Virus record (IMG/VR): IMGVR_UViG_3300009011_000002
Coordinates: 62,001 to 126,000 of that record
DNA: 64,000 bases
Direction: 5' to 3' (one strand)
The notes beneath the pieces were generated by a model that did no database searches, was not told where the DNA came from, and was given only the letters and a program-made list of their open reading frames with translations. The first letter of the stretch is position 1. The number at the start of each line of letters is the position of its first letter. Made by a program: the position numbers and the translations under genes. Below, in pieces: positions 1 to 61,808 of the stretch.

Positions 1-674
1 CCTACGGTGACGCTAGGGGCACGATAAACGATTCCCTTCGTCGCACTACCACCTTGGTCCAAAAGACCGTGTAACAGCGCGATGCGGTCTTCCAGAGCAC
101 CGTCGAGGTACTCATGTGGCAAACCGTGTTTAACGTCGAAGTTAATCTCCGCACCGTTCAGACGGCGAATGATCCGTTGGTCACCTTCACCGATCAGCTC
201 GTAACCTTCCGGTAGGTGTTCCCGGACGTAGGTGTCTTGAGCAACGCCGTGGCTGGTGTAGTACAACCGACCTTTCGATTGCCAGGCGGTGTACATCAGA
301 CCCATGATGTACGGATGGATCTTCAGCTTCTTCTTGGGCCCGTCAATGGGTGCTACCAACGGGACTTCGAAACGACGTCTCCCACCCTTCTTGTCCAGTT
401 CCAACGCCAAACGAGCGGTACTGAAGTCACCGGTGATCCCGTCCTTGTTGTCGAACAAGGTCCACAAGTGTTCAGCCCCCACTTGGGTAATACGGCCGTC
501 ACTCATGGTGACGTTGTACAGACGCATGACACCTTGTGGATGGATGCCCATCACACGGCTGGTCTTACCATGACGGTTCCAGATCTCGTCGCCAGTACGG
601 AGTTCGGAGATCTTCTTCCAGCTAACGTTACCGTCTTCACCCACCACAGCCACTTCGTTCTGATCCCACTGCAT
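1..674 (-). mobile_element. Intein (N-terminal part) in the terminase P-loop, Met1, with a degenerate LAGLIDADG domain
   Basis: After PRQQGK the frame reads MQWDQNEVAVV...WKKISELRTGDEIW...VMGIHPQGVMRLYNVTMSDGRITQVGAEHLW (Hint blocks A and B), then PYIMGLMYTAW (block C-like) and RIALLHGLLDQGG (block E-like). The C-terminal junction lies outside the window. Confidence 0.85.
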
Positions 675-1220
675 CTTGCCTTGCTGACGCGGCATGATCA
701 TGTACGTGGTGATGTGGTTCAGGTAAGTCCAGATGAAACTGATGTTACCCCGGTTGGCCATGAAGTTCAGTTCAGGCTTCAACCGACACACCTCTCGCAG
801 GAAGTACCAAAAGTTAGCTCGGCATTCTTCTGCAATCCAGGTGCGTTGTTCGTTGGTCAAATCCTCAGCGTAAGGATCCACCCCTTTCAACATAGGGTTG
901 TTCAGCTGGAGGAGGAAGTAGTAGTTCTTGATTCCTTGCTTCCGGAAGACTTCGGCTGTCCGGAGGAAACTGGCGTTCTTGGTAGAAAGGTCAGCCGCTG
1001 CTTTGTAGCGAGCAAAGTCTTTCAGGAAACGGACGGTCTTGATACTGCTCAGACTGTCTTCGTTGAAGTGTGCCATGATGAGTTCATCACGGGTACGCTT
1101 GGTGTGATCGATCCGCAACCTGCGATCATCGATCAGCTCGGTTGGAAGATTCTGACAGCCCAGGTAGTCCACCAGGTCCGTCGCGAACTTCAGTACGGGA
1201 TTGTCAGATTCTGAAGTCAT
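1..1220 (-). CDS. terL: Terminase large subunit (5' part, runs off the window), phiKZ gp25-like, containing an intein
   Basis: Not in the ORF track because it is open at the window edge. Manual translation from ATG 1220 (RBS GGAG) gives MTSESDNPVL...NYYFLLQLNNPMLKGVDPY...CRANFWYFLREV...NRGNISFIWTYLNHITTYMIMPRQQGK. This is the phiKZ-type TerL N-terminus and Walker A. Synteny with the three virion genes and the sheath fits. Confidence 0.88.
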   Translation of the reverse strand, partial: MTSESDNPVLKFATDLVDYLGCQNLPTELIDDRRLRIDHTKRTRDELIMAHFNEDSLSSIKTVRFLKDFARYKAAADLSTKNASFLRTAEVFRKQGIKNYYFLLQLNNPMLKGVDPYAEDLTNEQRTWIAEECRANFWYFLREVCRLKPELNFMANRGNISFIWTYLNHITTYMIMPRQQGKMQWDQNEVAVVGEDGNVSWKKISELRTGDEIWNRHGKTSRVMGIHPQGVMRLYNVTMSDGRITQVGAEHLWTLFDNKDGITGDFSTARLALELDKKGGRRRFEVPLVAPIDGPKKKLKIHPYIMGLMYTAWQSKGRLYYTSHGVAQDTYVREHLPEGYELIGEGDQRIIRRLNGAEINFDVKHGLPHEYLDGALEDRIALLHGLLDQGGSATKGIVYRAPSVTV

Positions 1221-1252
1221 GCGTAACTCCGACAAAAGCGGAATGATGAAAA

Positions 1253-1281
1253 GGTAGCCTAGGCCACTGGCCTAGGCTACC
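1253..1281. terminator. 14-bp stem hairpin (GGTAGCCTAGGCCA-C-TGGCCTAGGCTACC) upstream of terL
   Basis: Perfect inverted repeat with a 1-nt loop, followed by TTTT on the minus strand. Confidence 0.55.
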
Positions 1282-52345: not shown

Positions 52346-53743
52346 TTAGGCTTGACGGATCGAACCCATCGGGATGCCGTCATTGCCGTCTACCACTTCG
52401 CGGTGGTTGTACGGACGGATGTACGGCGATTGGATGCCCAACAGGAACGCATACAGCGCGTCGATGAAGCTTTGGGTGTAACGCTTGTACAGCTTGGTCT
52501 GGAAGTCGAGCGCTTCTTCCTTCAGCGGTACCGGCAGACCTGGGGCTTCGTAGGAGTAAACCACCCACTCGTTCAGGTCGAGGCCGATGTTGCCACCCTT
52601 GCCGTGCAGCTCTTGCAGGATGTCGTTGGCGGTCGATTCGATCCAGTCCATGCCGAACTTGGCAGAGAAGATGTAGATCGCCTTCATGAAGTGGCTGGAA
52701 GCCAACAGACGGGTCTTCACCACTTGACGCCACAGGTCCAGGATAACCTTGTGGTTGCGCAGACGGTTCTGGTACTTGTCCATCATCCGGTTCATCTGCT
52801 TGTTCATCACCGTGAGGCGACGGACTACCAGTTTAACCGGGTCAGGGAACGTCTGCCAGTCGTCCAGATTCACCGCGTTGTCGCCCAGGATCACTTCACC
52901 CGATTCAGGGAGTTCAGGGAACACACGGTCCAGGCCGATGTTGATGGCCGAGAAGTCGTTGACGCCCTTAAAGGTGAGGTACAGGTCGTGGTCTTTCCGG
53001 GGGATCAGGTCCTTCAAGCCATCCGCCAACTTGGTCGCGTGAGCGATCTTGTCATCGAATTCCTTGTTGAACTGCTTGGCCACACGGTCGAGTTGCAGGA
53101 GGTCTTCTTGCAGGATATCGTCGTCTTCATGCTTGCCCGAGCTACCCAGCCAGTGGAGGGGCAACTCTATAGGAGACAGGAATTCGTGCAGGCCATCGCC
53201 GTACTGATAACGCCACAACAGCTGGTTACGGAAGACGTTGATGATCTCGTCGAAGCGGTGGTGAGCGGCCTGTTCCAAGAACGTTTTATAGTTCTCTTCC
53301 ATGGTCACGTAGGTGTAGGAAGCACCTTCCGCAATGTCGTAACGGACGTAGCGTACGTGACGCTCACCCTTGTAACCCTCGTACAGACTTACCATCGGTA
53401 CGATGCCTTCCATTTCAGGGTGCTTATGGAAGAAGTAGTTGAACACGCCGTCGCACAGTTCACGGAATTCCGGGGTGCGGTTGGATTCCGGGTGGGTAAA
53501 CTCGGTTGGCGAGATGATCTGAATCCGCGGGATGGTGGTCTGCCAGACTTCAGGAATAGGCACGTATTTACCAGGGCTACCCAGGGTAAGGTCTGCCGCC
53601 AACACCCGGCCGTACGTAGACTTCATTTCGTTACCCAGCACGAACTTGTCGCCGCTCAAGGCTTCAGACACAGCAGCCCGATCTTCCTCGACGCCCGCGA
53701 CCAGTTCTTCAACAGTCGGGTATTCCATTTCTTTATCAGACAT
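52346..53743 (-). CDS. Hypothetical protein, 465 aa
   Basis: Long acidic ORF with GC3-rich codons. Confidence 0.8.
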   Translation of the reverse strand: MSDKEMEYPTVEELVAGVEEDRAAVSEALSGDKFVLGNEMKSTYGRVLAADLTLGSPGKYVPIPEVWQTTIPRIQIISPTEFTHPESNRTPEFRELCDGVFNYFFHKHPEMEGIVPMVSLYEGYKGERHVRYVRYDIAEGASYTYVTMEENYKTFLEQAAHHRFDEIINVFRNQLLWRYQYGDGLHEFLSPIELPLHWLGSSGKHEDDDILQEDLLQLDRVAKQFNKEFDDKIAHATKLADGLKDLIPRKDHDLYLTFKGVNDFSAINIGLDRVFPELPESGEVILGDNAVNLDDWQTFPDPVKLVVRRLTVMNKQMNRMMDKYQNRLRNHKVILDLWRQVVKTRLLASSHFMKAIYIFSAKFGMDWIESTANDILQELHGKGGNIGLDLNEWVVYSYEAPGLPVPLKEEALDFQTKLYKRYTQSFIDALYAFLLGIQSPYIRPYNHREVVDGNDGIPMGSIRQA

Positions 53744-53772
53744 TGCTGTACTCTCTTTTTCAAGGATTCGAT

Positions 53773-56613
53773 ATGTTAACTGACTTTTTCTCGGTAGGTG
53801 TTAAACAGACTGGGAACTACGTGCACATTACCGGAGTTTCCTACAAGGCACTCGAACGCGATATCAGTAAGTTCTACAGCACCAGTCTACTCAACAAGTA
53901 CCAAATTCGTCGTGAGTCGTGGGACACCATCAAGGTCCACAACTTCTTCTTGGTGGAGCTCTATGAGATCCTCCGTGAACTGTTGCAGCTGCGTACAATG
54001 GCCAGCCGCCGTCGGGATCTGGCAGAGCTCAGACACCTGCTGGAAACCGAAACGTGGATCAAGGATACTGTTAACCCAGTAGGCACTCCTTTTGATTTCA
54101 GTAAGCTGGATCGTTTTCAAACCAAGCTCTTTCCGGAACAACGGATGTTCTTGGAACAGTACCCGTTGTTGGTTAAGAGTTTCCACCTGAAAGGTTTCCT
54201 GCTGGACGCAGTACCCGGCAGTGGTAAAGCGATGCCCCTCGACACCAAGGTTAAAGTCCCCGGTGGGTGGCGAGAGATAGGAGACCTTAAAATAGGCGAC
54301 CTAGTAATAGGACCCAAAGGGAACACCACTACGGTCACTGCCGTCTACCCGCAAGGTGAAACGGATGTGTACCGGTTCATCTTAGAAGATGGTCGTACAG
54401 TGGATTCTCACCCTCTGCATTTGTGGGAAGTAGTAGAGACTGACTTCGAGGGTACTACTGAACCTCGTACTGCGGTGACTACAACGATTGATATCGTTAA
54501 CCACTTCAGTCAGTTCAGTTATCACCTCCCCATGGTCGGTGAAATAGGAGGTATTGACCTCTCCACAACCACTGACTGCCTGGGGGTTGCCCAAACCCTT
54601 CTTCGCTCTGACGTAGATATTGGGAGCTCAGTGTTAGAACTCCCGTACAACGATCGCTTCAACATTACCAAGGCCATGCTGGAAGCATCTGGCATTCAAC
54701 TGGACGGTAAAGCGATTGCCTTCTCCAGTGATGGACACCAAGCCGCAGAGAACTTCCGAGACCTCATGTGGAGTCTGGGTGGTCGTGCGATAGTAGGTAC
54801 CTTTGAAGGTAAATCGGTTTGCTGGTTCTTCCACCGTGAAGTGGTCGCGCTAGTGAACAACCTGATCATCGGTGATCCTGCTTTGACCATCAACCTGGAA
54901 GAACACCAACGCACACTGTTGGGTATCCGGGCAGTACACAAGGTAGACCCCGAGGAAACCGTCTGTATTGCGATTGACAGCGAAGATAAGCTGTTTGTGG
55001 TAGATGACTACGTCGTCACCCATAACACGTTCACGTCGCTCGTATGGAGCCAATTGGTGAGTGATGCACCCACCGTGGTATTGGCCCCGCTGAACGTGGT
55101 AGACGAAGTGTGGGTGAAGGAGTTTGTCAAGCACTTCAAGAAGCCACCAAAGGTCTGGACAACCAAGTCCGGGGTAGCCCTTAAAGAGGGTTATGATTAC
55201 TACATCGTGCACCACGACTACTTGCAACGGGAAGGGTTCAACATCCTCTTGCGGTTCCTCGAGACCTACTGCAAGAACAACAAGGTCAAGCCTAAGCTGA
55301 TCATCGACGAGTCCCACAACTTCAACGAGATCAAAGCCAAGCAGACCCAGCGGCTTATTCAGTTGGCGGATGCAAACGTGTTCTCGGATACGTTGCCAAT
55401 GTCGGGTACGTTGTTCAAGGCCTTGGGGAGCGAGCTGTTCCCGATGCAGTGCCTGATCGACAAACACTTCGACACCATTGCCCGTCAGTTCTTCTTGGCG
55501 AGCTACGGTCGTAACCGACCTGCACTGATGACGTTGCTGTCTCACCGGATCGGTAAGGTGAAGTTTACTATTCCTGAACTGGTCGGGATGGGAGCGGCTC
55601 CTCCATTCGAGATCGTCAAGGTCCAAGTACCAGGCAGTGACAAGTACACGCTCGATGCGATCCGCTTGCAAATGCAGACGTACATCGCCGAACGGGTCAA
55701 GTTTTACAACCACCACATGCCTGCGTTTATCACGTTCTACAATGACGTGATCAGTCGTTACGAGTTCTCCATTCGTACTCACCCAAAGGAACTGGAGGAG
55801 CTGCGTCGCTACAAGACAATCGTTCGCCGCTTCCAGACCCAAGGGTACAACAACTTCACTGATGCACAGGACAGTGTGTTCTGTAAAGAGGTGGAGGTAA
55901 ACATTGAGCGAGACCTCAAAGGTAAAGAACTGGCAGATTTCCGTAACGTGAAGTCAGCAGTGAAGTACCTCGGGTTGAAACTCCGTGGGGAGGCATTGGG
56001 TAACGTACTGGGCAGGGCCCGTATCAACGCGATCAAGGATATGATCGAATATGCGGACCTTCCCAAGTACATCGACAACGTGGAGAAGAAGACGGTTATC
56101 TTTACCTCGTACGTCGAATCCCTTCAATTGACGAATGACCATTTGCGAGCGAAGGGTTACAACCCAGTCATGGTGTACGGGGCTACCAACCACGAACGGG
56201 ACATGCTGGTGGAGCAGTTCAAAACGGATCCTCGGGTAAACCCCCTGGGTGCGACCTACTCCAGCTTGAAGGAAGGCTACCCCCTCCTGATGGCCAACCA
56301 GATCATCTCGTTGGATGCACCGTATCGAGACGGGGAGATCAAGCAGGTACAAGCCCGTGTATGGCGAACCGGCCAGGACACCCAGTGTTTCTTCTGGATG
56401 CTCGATCTGGACACCGGCACAAAGCTGAACATCACCACCCGTAGCTTGGACATCTTGGCATGGAGCCGTGACCAAGTAGACACCCTTCTGGGGCGCTTGG
56501 ACACACCTGTAGCGTTCACAAACGTTACCGGGCAGGAGATGTTAGACCTGAGTGAAGAACCCTTCTCTAAACCGCTCCGATCCAGTAACAGCGTTTTGTC
56601 TCTCTTTAACTAG
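53773..56613 (+). CDS. SF2/SNF2-like helicase precursor containing an intein (about 680 aa after splicing)
   Basis: AVPGSGK|intein|TFT, IIDESHN, PMSGT, TVIFT, SLKEGY and QVQARVWRTGQ. Start at ATG 53773 with RBS AAGGA. Confidence 0.9.
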   Translation: MLTDFFSVGVKQTGNYVHITGVSYKALERDISKFYSTSLLNKYQIRRESWDTIKVHNFFLVELYEILRELLQLRTMASRRRDLAELRHLLETETWIKDTVNPVGTPFDFSKLDRFQTKLFPEQRMFLEQYPLLVKSFHLKGFLLDAVPGSGKAMPLDTKVKVPGGWREIGDLKIGDLVIGPKGNTTTVTAVYPQGETDVYRFILEDGRTVDSHPLHLWEVVETDFEGTTEPRTAVTTTIDIVNHFSQFSYHLPMVGEIGGIDLSTTTDCLGVAQTLLRSDVDIGSSVLELPYNDRFNITKAMLEASGIQLDGKAIAFSSDGHQAAENFRDLMWSLGGRAIVGTFEGKSVCWFFHREVVALVNNLIIGDPALTINLEEHQRTLLGIRAVHKVDPEETVCIAIDSEDKLFVVDDYVVTHNTFTSLVWSQLVSDAPTVVLAPLNVVDEVWVKEFVKHFKKPPKVWTTKSGVALKEGYDYYIVHHDYLQREGFNILLRFLETYCKNNKVKPKLIIDESHNFNEIKAKQTQRLIQLADANVFSDTLPMSGTLFKALGSELFPMQCLIDKHFDTIARQFFLASYGRNRPALMTLLSHRIGKVKFTIPELVGMGAAPPFEIVKVQVPGSDKYTLDAIRLQMQTYIAERVKFYNHHMPAFITFYNDVISRYEFSIRTHPKELEELRRYKTIVRRFQTQGYNNFTDAQDSVFCKEVEVNIERDLKGKELADFRNVKSAVKYLGLKLRGEALGNVLGRARINAIKDMIEYADLPKYIDNVEKKTVIFTSYVESLQLTNDHLRAKGYNPVMVYGATNHERDMLVEQFKTDPRVNPLGATYSSLKEGYPLLMANQIISLDAPYRDGEIKQVQARVWRTGQDTQCFFWMLDLDTGTKLNITTRSLDILAWSRDQVDTLLGRLDTPVAFTNVTGQEMLDLSEEPFSKPLRSSNSVLSLFN
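54229..55026 (+). mobile_element. Class 3 intein (266 aa, Ala1, W-C-T triad) with a decayed LAGLIDADG remnant
   Basis: Begins AMPLDT; block B HLW; block F TVCIAID; ends VVTHN, followed by Thr+1. Rare codons (ATA, CTA) are enriched relative to the host gene. Confidence 0.92.
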
Positions 56614-61616: not shown

Positions 61617-61808
61617 TTACAAATCGAGTGCCTCTTCCATCGCCTCGACCATTTCCAAGAAGGTTGCGTCGTCCGCCACCTGTATCGTGTTAACCGCCGC
61701 GGTCCAGACATTAGAGACAGAATCGAAATAGATGTTGATGTCTTTACAGCAGGCGGACGCGCGCTCTCCGATAGCGAGCATCCGATCTTCCAAAAGTTTA
61801 TTGCTCAT
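61617..61808 (-). CDS. Hypothetical protein, 63 aa (paralogue of 60818-61042)
   Basis: RBS AAGGA, with visible similarity to the paralogue. Confidence 0.7.
   Translation of the reverse strand: MSNKLLEDRMLAIGERASACCKDINIYFDSVSNVWTAAVNTIQVADDATFLEMVEAMEEALDL

What the first reader, a model, noticed from the sequence alone, without database searches (positions are those of the whole stretch)
1..674. Terminase intein starting with Met (no N-terminal nucleophile)
Seen: an intein sits right after the Walker A Lys (PRQQGK) and starts MQWDQN rather than C/S. It has the block B HLW Trp and eroded endonuclease motifs (PYIMGLMYTAW, GLLDQGG). Established: class 3 inteins lack Cys1/Ser1 and use a block F Cys (W-C-T triad), and terminase P-loops are common insertion sites. 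Inference: this is a class 3 intein with an unusual Met1 and a dead homing endonuclease. Packaging would depend on a Cys-initiated splicing step that could be redox-gated.
Basis: partly seen in the sequence, partly recalled or inferred. Interest (0 to 1): 0.6.

Follow-up and report, generated by a model that had tools for sequence, protein, structure and literature searches.

The report
Class 3 intein in jumbo-phage terminase
The DNA-packaging motor gene (large terminase) of this phiKZ/EL-like jumbo phage is split inside its ATP-binding loop by an ordinary class 3 self-splicing intein with a decayed homing endonuclease, and its Met first residue is just one of many residues tolerated at that position.

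Summary
The window opens inside a 1086/1091-aa terminase large subunit (TerL) gene on the minus strand. A 310-aa insert (window 674 down to 255 nt before base 1) sits between Lys and Thr of the Walker A motif PRQQGK|T. Nine intein-free TerL relatives align with a gap that matches the insert exactly.

The flank outside the window supplies the missing pieces: block F Cys (..ATCIEVD..), block G T-H-N, and Thr+1. Trp (B:12), Cys (F:4), Thr (G:5), His (B:10), His-Asn and Thr+1 are invariant in 112/112 orthologous inteins, so every sequence criterion of class 3 is met.

AlphaFold (pLDDT 93.6) gives a HINT plus LAGLIDADG fold, matching PI-SceI and the class 3 DnaB inteins.

Both catalytic acidic residues of the endonuclease are lost, while 15 relatives keep them. 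The domain is still under purifying selection (dN/dS 0.14-0.23).

Met1 is not unusual. Residue 1 takes 11 different amino acids in this family (Met in 24/112), and Met occurs in 5/91 related P-loop inteins in other proteins.

Redox gating is untested, and no conserved partner cysteine exists.

Verdict: a new member of a known kind, orthologous to the insert in Pseudomonas phage EL gp011. Low interest.

The parts
1..1220 (-). Window part of the terminase large subunit (TerL) precursor gene. The likely start is ATG 1218-1220; the most upstream TTG is at 1233-1235. The gene runs on to G000:C1:59963 outside the window.
   Evidence: ORF lists. PHROG phrog_2 'terminase large subunit', E=1e-41. 62% identical over its full length to Pseudomonas phage EL gp011, annotated terminase large subunit. 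It is the only TerL-like locus in the 226,773-bp genome.
675..1220 (-). N-extein (182 aa from the ATG), ending in the first half of Walker A.
   Evidence: Aligns with the N-terminal 176-182 aa of intein-free TerL homologues.
675..692 (-). Walker A / P-loop first half, P-R-Q-Q-G-K. Lys187 is the -1 residue.
   Evidence: Gly and Lys are invariant in 112/112 intein-bearing homologues. Intein-free homologues read PRQ.GK directly followed by T/S-V.
1..674 (-). Intein, window part: residues 1-224 of 310. The remaining 86 residues lie just before window base 1, at G000:C1:61745-62002. They include block F Cys290 (G000:C1:61805-61807), block G Thr308-His309-Asn310 (61745-61753) and C-extein Thr+1 (61742-61744).
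   Evidence: The gap in 9 intein-free homologues equals this stretch. AF2 model has pLDDT 93.6 and pTM 0.91. Foldseek matches PI-SceI at E=7.6e-12 and the class 3 Mch/Msm DnaB inteins at TMt 0.76-0.78. PDB sequence hits are 6riz, 6rix and 6bs8.
672..674 (-). Intein residue 1, Met (ATG), non-nucleophilic.
   Evidence: The column is hypervariable, with 11 residue types and Met in 24/112.
462..473 (-). Block B core E-H-L-W: His69 (B:10) and Trp71 (B:12) of the WCT triplet. B:7 is Gly, not the class 1 Thr.
   Evidence: His and Trp are invariant in 112/112. B:7 is Gly in 89/112.
282..314 (-). Degenerate first LAGLIDADG motif (block C), PYIMGLMYT-AW. The column of the catalytic Asp is deleted.
   Evidence: Relatives with a canonical motif read ..LGVLLGDG.. 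at this position. Helix 121-129 in the AF2 model.
48..68 (-). Degenerate second LAGLIDADG motif (block E), GLLDQGG. The catalytic Asp is replaced by Gly.
   Evidence: Relatives read ..GLLDTDG... Only 15/112 keep both acidic residues. Helix 194-208 in the AF2 model. The central domain matches I-DmoI.

Best explanation
This is a class 3 intein of 310 aa: a HINT splicing domain with a nested, catalytically dead LAGLIDADG domain. It is fixed in the only terminase large subunit gene of an EL/phiKZ-like, PhuZ-encoding jumbo phage, and it is inserted between Lys and Thr of the Walker A motif.

The precursor cannot form a P-loop, so DNA packaging needs protein splicing.

The mechanism is inferred from the experimentally studied class 3 inteins:
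1. Block F Cys290, helped by block B His69 and Trp71, attacks the Lys(-1)-Met1 peptide bond. This gives a thioester-branched intermediate.
2. The N-extein is passed to the side chain of Thr+1.
3. Asn310 cyclises and frees the intein.
4. An O-to-N shift restores ...PRQQGK-TVSV..., an intact Walker A.

Residue 1 has no chemical role, so it drifts; Met is the state inherited in this sub-clade.

The endonuclease can no longer cut DNA, so the element is now inherited vertically with the phage.

Shown here: the insertion site, boundaries, motifs, fold, conservation pattern and loss of the endonuclease active-site residues. Inferred: splicing activity, the order of the chemical steps, and endonuclease inactivity.
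For: Boundaries:
- Nine intein-free TerL homologues (776-780 aa) have a gap equal to aa 188-497.
- 11 of 52 IMG/VR loci read PRQ.GK|T(S)V without an insert.
- Intein-free P0106 matches the genome in two pieces around the insert.

Class 3 signature: Lys-1, His B:10, Trp B:12, Cys F:4, Thr G:5, His, Asn and Thr+1 are each 112/112, while residue 1 shows 11 residue types. This is the co-variation that defines class 3 (PMC2807308; PMC5050341).

Fold:
- AF2 pLDDT 93.6 and pTM 0.91.
- Foldseek: PI-SceI 7.6e-12, TliVMA 4e-11, MchDnaB-1 TMt 0.78, Msm DnaB class 3 intein TMt 0.76, I-DmoI for the middle domain.

Selection (NG86 dN/dS):
- Versus the nearest relative: extein 0.048, splicing domain 0.055, endonuclease domain 0.143.
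- Versus P0003: 0.11, 0.15 and 0.23.
- So the splicing domain is as constrained as the extein.

Endonuclease and inheritance:
- The catalytic Asp column is deleted in block C and is Gly in block E, whereas 15 relatives keep D/D.
- In the extein tree the query lies in a clade (support 100) of 75 rows, all intein-bearing and all with a degenerate endonuclease.
- Empty alleles and intact endonucleases occur only in the other clades.

Single copy: there is no second TerL in the genome.
Against: - No experiment: splicing of this protein, or of any orthologue, was not found in the papers searched.
- Pfam does not recognise the intein above threshold (Hom_end_hint E=0.13). Sequence similarity to solved class 3 inteins is weak (E 0.02-0.2), so common descent with the class 3 clade was not tested.
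- The endonuclease domain is still under purifying selection (dN/dS 0.14-0.23) and folds confidently. It may therefore keep some role that simple decay does not explain.
- dS is near or above saturation for the second comparison.
Confidence: 0.9

Rival explanations
1. Conditional, redox-gated splicing. Oxidation of the catalytic block F Cys, by disulfide or sulfenylation, reversibly holds TerL as an inactive precursor, so packaging is timed by the redox state of the cell.
For: The initiating nucleophile is a thiol. The class 3 Msm DnaBi1 intein is reversibly blocked by H2O2 through a Cys118-Cys48 disulfide (PMC6195587). H2O2 also inhibits N-cleavage of MchDnaB1 (PMC7664689). 49/112 relatives have a second Cys two residues before the catalytic one, giving C-x-C.
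Against: This intein has Ala, not Cys, at F:2. Its only other Cys (intein 244) lies in the endonuclease domain and is shared by 3/112 relatives. Seven relatives have the block F Cys as their only Cys. No partner Cys is therefore conserved, and any thiol enzyme is oxidant-sensitive without being a switch. Nothing was measured.
Confidence: 0.12
2. Splicing-dead insert: the TerL gene is a pseudogene, or its product works with the insert in place.
For: No experimental proof of splicing exists. One class 3-like intein (Arthrobacter Arth_1007) is known to be inactive (PMC3196547).
Against: That inactive case lacks the block F Cys, whereas here every catalytic residue is invariant in 112/112. The splicing domain has dN/dS 0.055. 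The insert breaks the GK|T P-loop, and the genome has no other TerL. The same arrangement occurs in cultured, plaque-forming phages: EL, RisingSun, Aphrodite1, Miami.
Confidence: 0.03
3. Class 2-like chemistry: Thr+1 attacks the N-terminal junction directly, and the block F Cys is only structural.
For: Residue 1 is non-nucleophilic in class 2 as well (PMC7664689).
Against: Class 2 inteins are known only in KlbA and lack the WCT triplet (PMC3196547; PMC2807308). Here W, C and T are invariant. In the prototype, the block F Cys is absolutely required.
Confidence: 0.03
4. A still-mobile intein: the endonuclease is active despite its odd motifs and the element is currently homing.
For: The endonuclease domain is folded and under purifying selection. 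In sister clades the intein is plainly mobile or recently gained or lost: P0087 and P0121 have identical exteins with and without it.
Against: Both metal-binding acidic residues are missing. No empty target allele was found in the 75-member clade. Intein divergence tracks extein divergence (r=0.88). GC content is similar, 54.2 versus 52.0%.
Confidence: 0.03

Closest known systems
TerL insert of Pseudomonas phage EL gp011 and of other EL/phiKZ-like jumbo phages (Erwinia RisingSun/Joad, Shewanella FishSpeaker, Vibrio Aphrodite1/USC-1, Klebsiella Miami, Aeromonas AerS_266/CF8)
   Same: Same gene, same K|T insertion site, same block F ..C-I-E-V.. and ..V-T-H-N|T. Identity is 42-63% over the whole precursor in one piece. 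EL begins with Gln1 (L023).
   Different: Residue 1 and the endonuclease state differ. The Aeromonas/Klebsiella-type members keep canonical LAGLIDADG motifs and Pfam PF14528 hits. Records annotate these genes as terminase, helicase or 'DarB-like', not as intein-bearing. From memory only, not verified here: InBase listed PhiEL inteins.
Mycobacteriophage Bethlehem DnaB intein (class 3 prototype; PMC2807308)
   Same: Non-nucleophilic residue 1 (Pro1 there), WCT triplet, Thr+1, P-loop ATPase host protein, LAGLIDADG domain, and similar size (341 aa).
   Different: Different extein (DnaB rather than TerL). B:7 is Ser there and Gly here. Splicing was shown experimentally there but not here.
Mycobacteriophage TerL1-a P-loop inteins (PMC5050341)
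   Same: Inserted between the invariant Walker A Lys and Thr of a phage TerL, described as the 'classic' P-loop site.
   Different: Different TerL family (terminase_1 of actinophages versus the phiKZ-type TerL, which Pfam does not recognise). That paper's class assignment for site a was not checked here.
Mycobacterium smegmatis / M. chimaera DnaB-1 class 3 mini-inteins (PDB 6bs8, 6rix, 6riy)
   Same: HINT fold with superposable W-C-T-H positions. These are the best structural matches for the splicing domain, TMt 0.76-0.78, and are also sequence hits. They start with Ala1.
   Different: They are mini-inteins without an endonuclease domain. DnaBi1 has the Cys48 partner for a redox disulfide, which this intein lacks.
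PI-SceI / TliVMA / PI-PfuI (class 1 inteins with LAGLIDADG endonuclease)
   Same: Overall two-domain architecture. These are the best whole-model Foldseek matches, E 1e-11 to 1e-9.
   Different: They are class 1 (Cys1 nucleophile, Asp at F:4) with an active endonuclease.

Membership tests
Class 3 intein | No Cys/Ser/Thr nucleophile at intein residue 1 | tested here: met
   Met1. Among 112 orthologues there are 11 residue types, and only one is a nucleophile (a single Cys1, P0091).
Class 3 intein | Trp at block B position 12 (WCT triplet) | tested here: met
   E-H-L-W, Trp71 of the intein; 112/112.
Class 3 intein | Cys at block F position 4 (WCT triplet; the initiating nucleophile) | tested here: met
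   ..A-T-C-I-E-V-D.., Cys290, found in the flank outside the window; 112/112. It aligns with the block F Cys of 6rix and 6riz.
Class 3 intein | Thr at block G position 5 (WCT triplet), followed by penultimate His and C-terminal Asn | tested here: met
   ..I-V-T-H-N|; each 112/112.
Class 3 intein | Thr or Ser as first C-extein residue | tested here: met
   Thr+1 is the Walker A Thr; 112/112. In 91 related inteins in other proteins it is T79, S11, C1.
Class 3 intein | Block B His (B:10) present, class 1 Thr at B:7 usually absent | tested here: met
   His69 is 112/112. B:7 is Gly in 89/112 and Thr in 1/112.
Class 3 intein | Splicing absolutely requires the block F Cys and goes through two branched intermediates | not testable with these tools
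   Needs expression and mutagenesis. Known for MP-Be DnaB (PMC2807308) and others (PMC5222942).
Class 3 intein | Falls inside the monophyletic class 3 clade (Tori and Perler) | not tested
   No tree with reference class 3 and class 1 inteins was built, and the defining paper (PMC3133030) is not held. Indirect support: 90 of 91 nearest inteins in other P-loop proteins carry H.W plus the block F Cys.
HINT (Hedgehog/intein) splicing domain | HINT beta-fold formed by the N- and C-terminal segments | tested here: met
   AF2 pLDDT 93.6. Foldseek matches to DnaB, DnaE, Prp8 and gp41-1 inteins and Hedgehog 1at0.
LAGLIDADG homing endonuclease | Double alpha-beta-beta-alpha-beta-beta-alpha fold with two LAGLIDADG helices | tested here: met
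   The central domain matches I-DmoI, and the whole model matches PI-SceI. The helices are at 121-129 and 194-208.
LAGLIDADG homing endonuclease | One acidic metal-binding residue at the end of each LAGLIDADG helix | tested here: not met
   The block C Asp column is deleted and the block E Asp is Gly. 15 relatives keep D/D. There is no Pfam PF14528 hit here, unlike P0086.
Terminase large subunit (phiKZ/EL type) | Homology to TerL and an intact Walker A after removal of the insert | tested here: met
   phrog_2 E=1e-41. The joined exteins read PRQQGK-TV, as in intein-free homologues, over 781 aa against their 776-780 aa.

The most novel reading that the evidence does not exclude
The catalytically dead endonuclease domain and the intein as a whole have been kept for a long time across an entire clade of nucleus-forming jumbo phages (75/75 sampled). 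The domain is under purifying selection (dN/dS 0.14-0.23). The novel reading is that the intein has been domesticated as a post-translational timer of packaging. Examples would be splicing made conditional on redox state, metal or DNA binding by the former endonuclease domain, so that TerL becomes active only late in infection or at the phage nucleus.
Probability: 0.08. Interest if true: 0.6.

Novelty: new member of a known kind. Interest (0 to 1): 0.2.

Why it matters
For annotation: the gene should be called a TerL precursor with a class 3 intein, and the mature protein is 776 aa from the ATG. Public records of its relatives call the same gene 'ATP-dependent helicase', 'DarB-like antirestriction' or 'hypothetical'.

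For intein biology it adds nothing new in kind. The family does offer a useful natural data set:
- 112 orthologous class 3 inteins at one site show that residue 1 is free to vary (11 residue types) while W, C, T, H, N and Thr+1 never change.
- One phage family holds all stages of the homing cycle: empty alleles, intact endonuclease, and fixed inteins with a dead endonuclease.

It is also a candidate Thr+1, Cys-initiated intein for protein engineering.

Tried and rejected
- Pfam on the precursor and on the intein gave nothing above threshold. PHROGs, homologue alignment and structure were needed instead.
- The search for related loci with the intein alone found no locus. It worked with an alignment of full-length homologues.
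- I looked for a published list of residue 1 in class 3 inteins. The supplement of PMC2807308 is not held, PMC3133030 is not held, and 'PhiEL' plus intein gave no paper. I therefore measured residue 1 directly, in 112 orthologues and in 91 related inteins in other proteins.
- My recollection that InBase lists PhiEL inteins could not be verified and is used only as a lead.
- I considered and rejected a conserved disulfide partner for the catalytic Cys.
- I considered a recent arrival of the intein. GC content (54.2 versus 52.0%) and co-divergence (r=0.88) argue against it.
- The higher dS in the intein than in the extein turned out to be part of a general mosaic of dS along the gene, also present in the N-extein. 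It is not evidence of intein transfer.
- Distances around Cys290 in the model could not be measured, because the tools return no coordinates.
- Not used because not needed: the large representative-protein search, reads tools, complex prediction, and any non-standard genetic code.

Full report
**What is there**

The window is bases 62001-126000 of a 226,773-bp virus record with direct terminal repeats. It opens inside a minus-strand gene. I fetched the flank as L003 = G000:C1:52001-66000.

- The ORF is L003:7960-11235(-), 1091 aa from the most upstream TTG.
- The ATG five codons further in (window 1218-1220) has a GGAG six bases upstream. The nearest homologues are called from that position. 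The precursor is therefore most likely 1086 aa. Residue numbers below count from the TTG.
- PHROGs calls the protein terminase large subunit (phrog_2, E=1e-41).
- It is 62% identical over its whole length to gp011 of Pseudomonas phage EL, annotated terminase large subunit.
- A PhuZ tubulin gene lies about 6.4 kb away (phrog_4733, E=2e-71). The phage is therefore an EL/phiKZ-like, presumably nucleus-forming jumbo phage.
- An intein-free TerL (P0106, Vibrio phage VP4B) finds only this locus in the genome.

**Checking the observation**

| Feature | Protein residues | Window coordinates |
|---|---|---|
| PRQQGK | 182-187 | 675-692 |
| Insert starts at Met | 188 | 672-674 |
| EHLW | 255-258 | 462-473 |
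| PYIMGLMYTAW | 308-318 | 282-314 |
| GLLDQGG | 390-396 | 48-68 |

The flank shows ..A-T-C-I-E-V-D.. (Cys477 = intein Cys290), then ..F-I-V-T-H-N, followed by T-V-S-V. The insert is 310 aa (aa 188-497, G000:C1:61745-62674), and 224 of its codons lie in the window.

**Boundaries**

A word-indexed protein search returned 120 homologues. I aligned them with the query.

- 112 carry an insert of 255-360 aa at the same point.
- 9 proteins of 776-780 aa have none, and their gap equals aa 188-497 exactly. They read PRQ.GK directly followed by T(S)V.
- In IMG/VR, 41 of 52 related loci have the insert and 11 do not.
- P0106 matches the genome as two pieces in one open frame around the insert.
- Removing the insert restores the Walker A motif G-K-T and gives 781 aa.

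**Class**

Class 3 inteins are defined by a non-nucleophilic first residue that co-varies with Trp at B:12, Cys at F:4 and Thr at G:5, and by Thr or Ser at +1. Most sit in P-loops of helicase-like ATPases, including phage terminases (PMC2807308; PMC5050341; PMC3196547).

- All of these sequence features are present here.
- Across the 112 orthologues, Lys-1, His B:10, Trp B:12, Cys F:4, Thr G:5, His, Asn and Thr+1 are each invariant.
- B:7 is Gly in 89/112 rather than the class 1 Thr.
- The best PDB sequence matches are gp41-1 engineered with the WCT motif (6riz) and the class 3 DnaB-1 inteins of M. chimaera and M. smegmatis (identities from PMC7664689 and PMC6195587).

**Fold**

I predicted the structure from an alignment of 28 inteins taken by reference from loci (A2). 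The model has mean pLDDT 93.6 and pTM 0.91. Foldseek results:

- The whole model matches inteins with LAGLIDADG endonucleases: PI-SceI E=7.6e-12, TliVMA and PhoVMA, and PI-PfuI.
- The splicing domain matches the class 3 MchDnaB-1 and Msm DnaB inteins (TM by target 0.76-0.78).
- The middle domain matches I-DmoI.

**Met1**

The finding's headline does not hold.

- Residue 1 is the most variable junction position: M24, L23, A16, F12, E11, Y8, G6, P5, Q4, D2, C1.
- On a tree of the exteins, the residue follows the clades. The query's sub-clade is uniformly Met, and neighbouring sub-clades are Phe, Tyr, Leu, Pro or Ala.
- A second search used the intein region alone. It found related inteins after the Walker A Lys of PhoH, DnaB, SNF2, UvrD-like, RecA, AAA+ and other proteins.
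- Of 91 of these with clean junctions, 90 carry H.W and the block F Cys.
- Their residue 1 is Ala 47, Glu 8, Leu 8, Ser 5, Met 5, and nine further types.

Met1 is thus an ordinary state of a position that has no chemical role in class 3 splicing. The prototype starts with Pro and Msm DnaBi1 with Ala.

**Endonuclease**

Fifteen relatives, of the Aeromonas and Klebsiella phage type, keep canonical motifs (..LGVLLGDG....GLLDTDG..) and Pfam LAGLIDADG_3 hits. In the query the Asp column of the first motif is deleted and the Asp of the second is Gly. Neither position is acidic in 94 of 112.

The extein tree shows:

- The query lies in a clade with support 100 that holds 75 rows. All of them are intein-bearing and all have a degenerate endonuclease.
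- Empty alleles and intact endonucleases occur only in the other clades, side by side.
- One such pair has identical exteins with and without a 360-aa intein (P0087 and P0121).

This is the expected sequence of invasion, fixation and endonuclease decay.

The decay is not neutral. NG86 dN/dS values:

| Comparison | Extein | Splicing domain | Endonuclease domain |
|---|---|---|---|
| Versus nearest relative | 0.048 | 0.055 | 0.143 |
| Versus the next relative (dS near saturation) | 0.11 | 0.15 | 0.23 |

The domain also folds confidently. Identity to the query falls in the order extein, then splicing domain, then endonuclease domain, and it tracks extein divergence (r=0.88).

**Mechanism and the redox idea**

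The most likely mechanism is the published class 3 pathway: attack by the block F Cys on the Lys-Met bond, transfer to Thr+1, Asn cyclisation, then acyl shift. This is inferred from family membership, not shown here.

The P-loop is interrupted and there is no second TerL. Packaging must therefore depend on splicing.

Redox control has a real precedent in a class 3 intein: the Cys118-Cys48 disulfide of Msm DnaBi1. Here, however:

- The only other Cys is in the endonuclease domain and is shared by 3/112 relatives.
- Seven relatives have no second Cys at all.
- The C-x-C arrangement seen in 49/112 relatives is Ala-x-Cys in this intein.

I give the redox switch about 0.1.

**Comparison, novelty and limits**

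This is a new member of a known kind. It is an orthologue of the insert in phage EL gp011 and in many cultured EL/phiKZ-like phages, and it sits at the 'classic' Lys|Thr P-loop site.

I found no paper that describes the intein of this TerL family. My memory that InBase listed PhiEL inteins could not be checked.

Not tested: splicing itself, endonuclease activity, and placement in a tree with reference class 1, 2 and 3 inteins.

Noticed in passing
window 54229-55026 (+), inside ORF window 53743-56613 (+): A second class 3 intein in the same window. It is 266 aa, lies in a 956-aa SF2/SNF2-like helicase (phrog_62 E=7e-104; Pfam Helicase_C), and is inserted after the P-loop..PGSGK|AMPLD... ...VVTHN|TFTS. 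It has Ala1, H-L-W..V-C-I-A-I.. and degenerate LAGLIDADG motifs. It is 23% identical to the TerL intein.
   Followed up: partly
G000:C1:27875-28636 (-), outside the window; L007:1501-2262 (-) in ORF L007:397-2775: A third class 3 intein in the genome. It is 254 aa, lies in a 792-aa helicase (phrog_16), and is again at GQGK|ALLET... ...VVTHN|TYMS, with Ala1, the WCT triplet and a truncated endonuclease domain. All three inteins of this phage therefore sit at Walker A Lys|Thr sites. Phage EL also gave three places with the TerL query.
   Followed up: partly
proteins P0087 (1136 aa) and P0121 (776 aa), homologues from public assemblies: These two TerL proteins have 100% identical exteins, one with a 360-aa intein carrying intact LAGLIDADG motifs and one without it. 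This is direct evidence that the intein is currently mobile, or was very recently gained or lost, in a sister clade.
   Followed up: yes
block F of homologues (alignment column of TerL aa 475): 49 of 112 orthologous inteins have a second Cys two residues before the catalytic Cys (..E-C-T-C-I-E-V..), a possible vicinal disulfide or metal site. The query has Ala there.
   Followed up: no
protein P0091 (homologue): One orthologue has Cys at intein residue 1 together with the full WCT triplet and an intact endonuclease. It resembles the few 'WCT inteins with Cys1/Ser1' noted by Tori et al..
   Followed up: no
window 1218-1235 (-): The ORF lister starts TerL at a TTG (1233-1235). The ATG at 1218-1220 has a GGAG six bases upstream and is where the closest homologues are called, so the precursor is probably 1086 aa.
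   Followed up: partly
window 1253-1281: A near-perfect 29-bp palindrome lies between the 74-aa ORF (1292-1516, -) and the TerL start. It is followed on the minus strand by a T-run, which makes it a terminator-like hairpin just upstream of TerL.
   Followed up: partly
TerL gene, query versus P0002 (L062:39-3299): Synonymous divergence is a mosaic along the gene. dS is 0.13-0.5 in most of the C-extein but 0.8-1.8 in N-extein codons 61-150 and in parts of the intein. This suggests recombination between related phages within the gene.
   Followed up: partly
L003:2506-3540 (-) = G000:C1:54506-55540; L003:4116-4748 (-): A PhuZ-type tubulin (phrog_4733 E=2e-71) and an HslV-family peptidase (phrog_1040 E=1.4e-27) lie a few kb beyond the far (3') end of TerL, just outside the window. 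PhuZ marks the phage as a nucleus-forming phiKZ-like type.
   Followed up: partly
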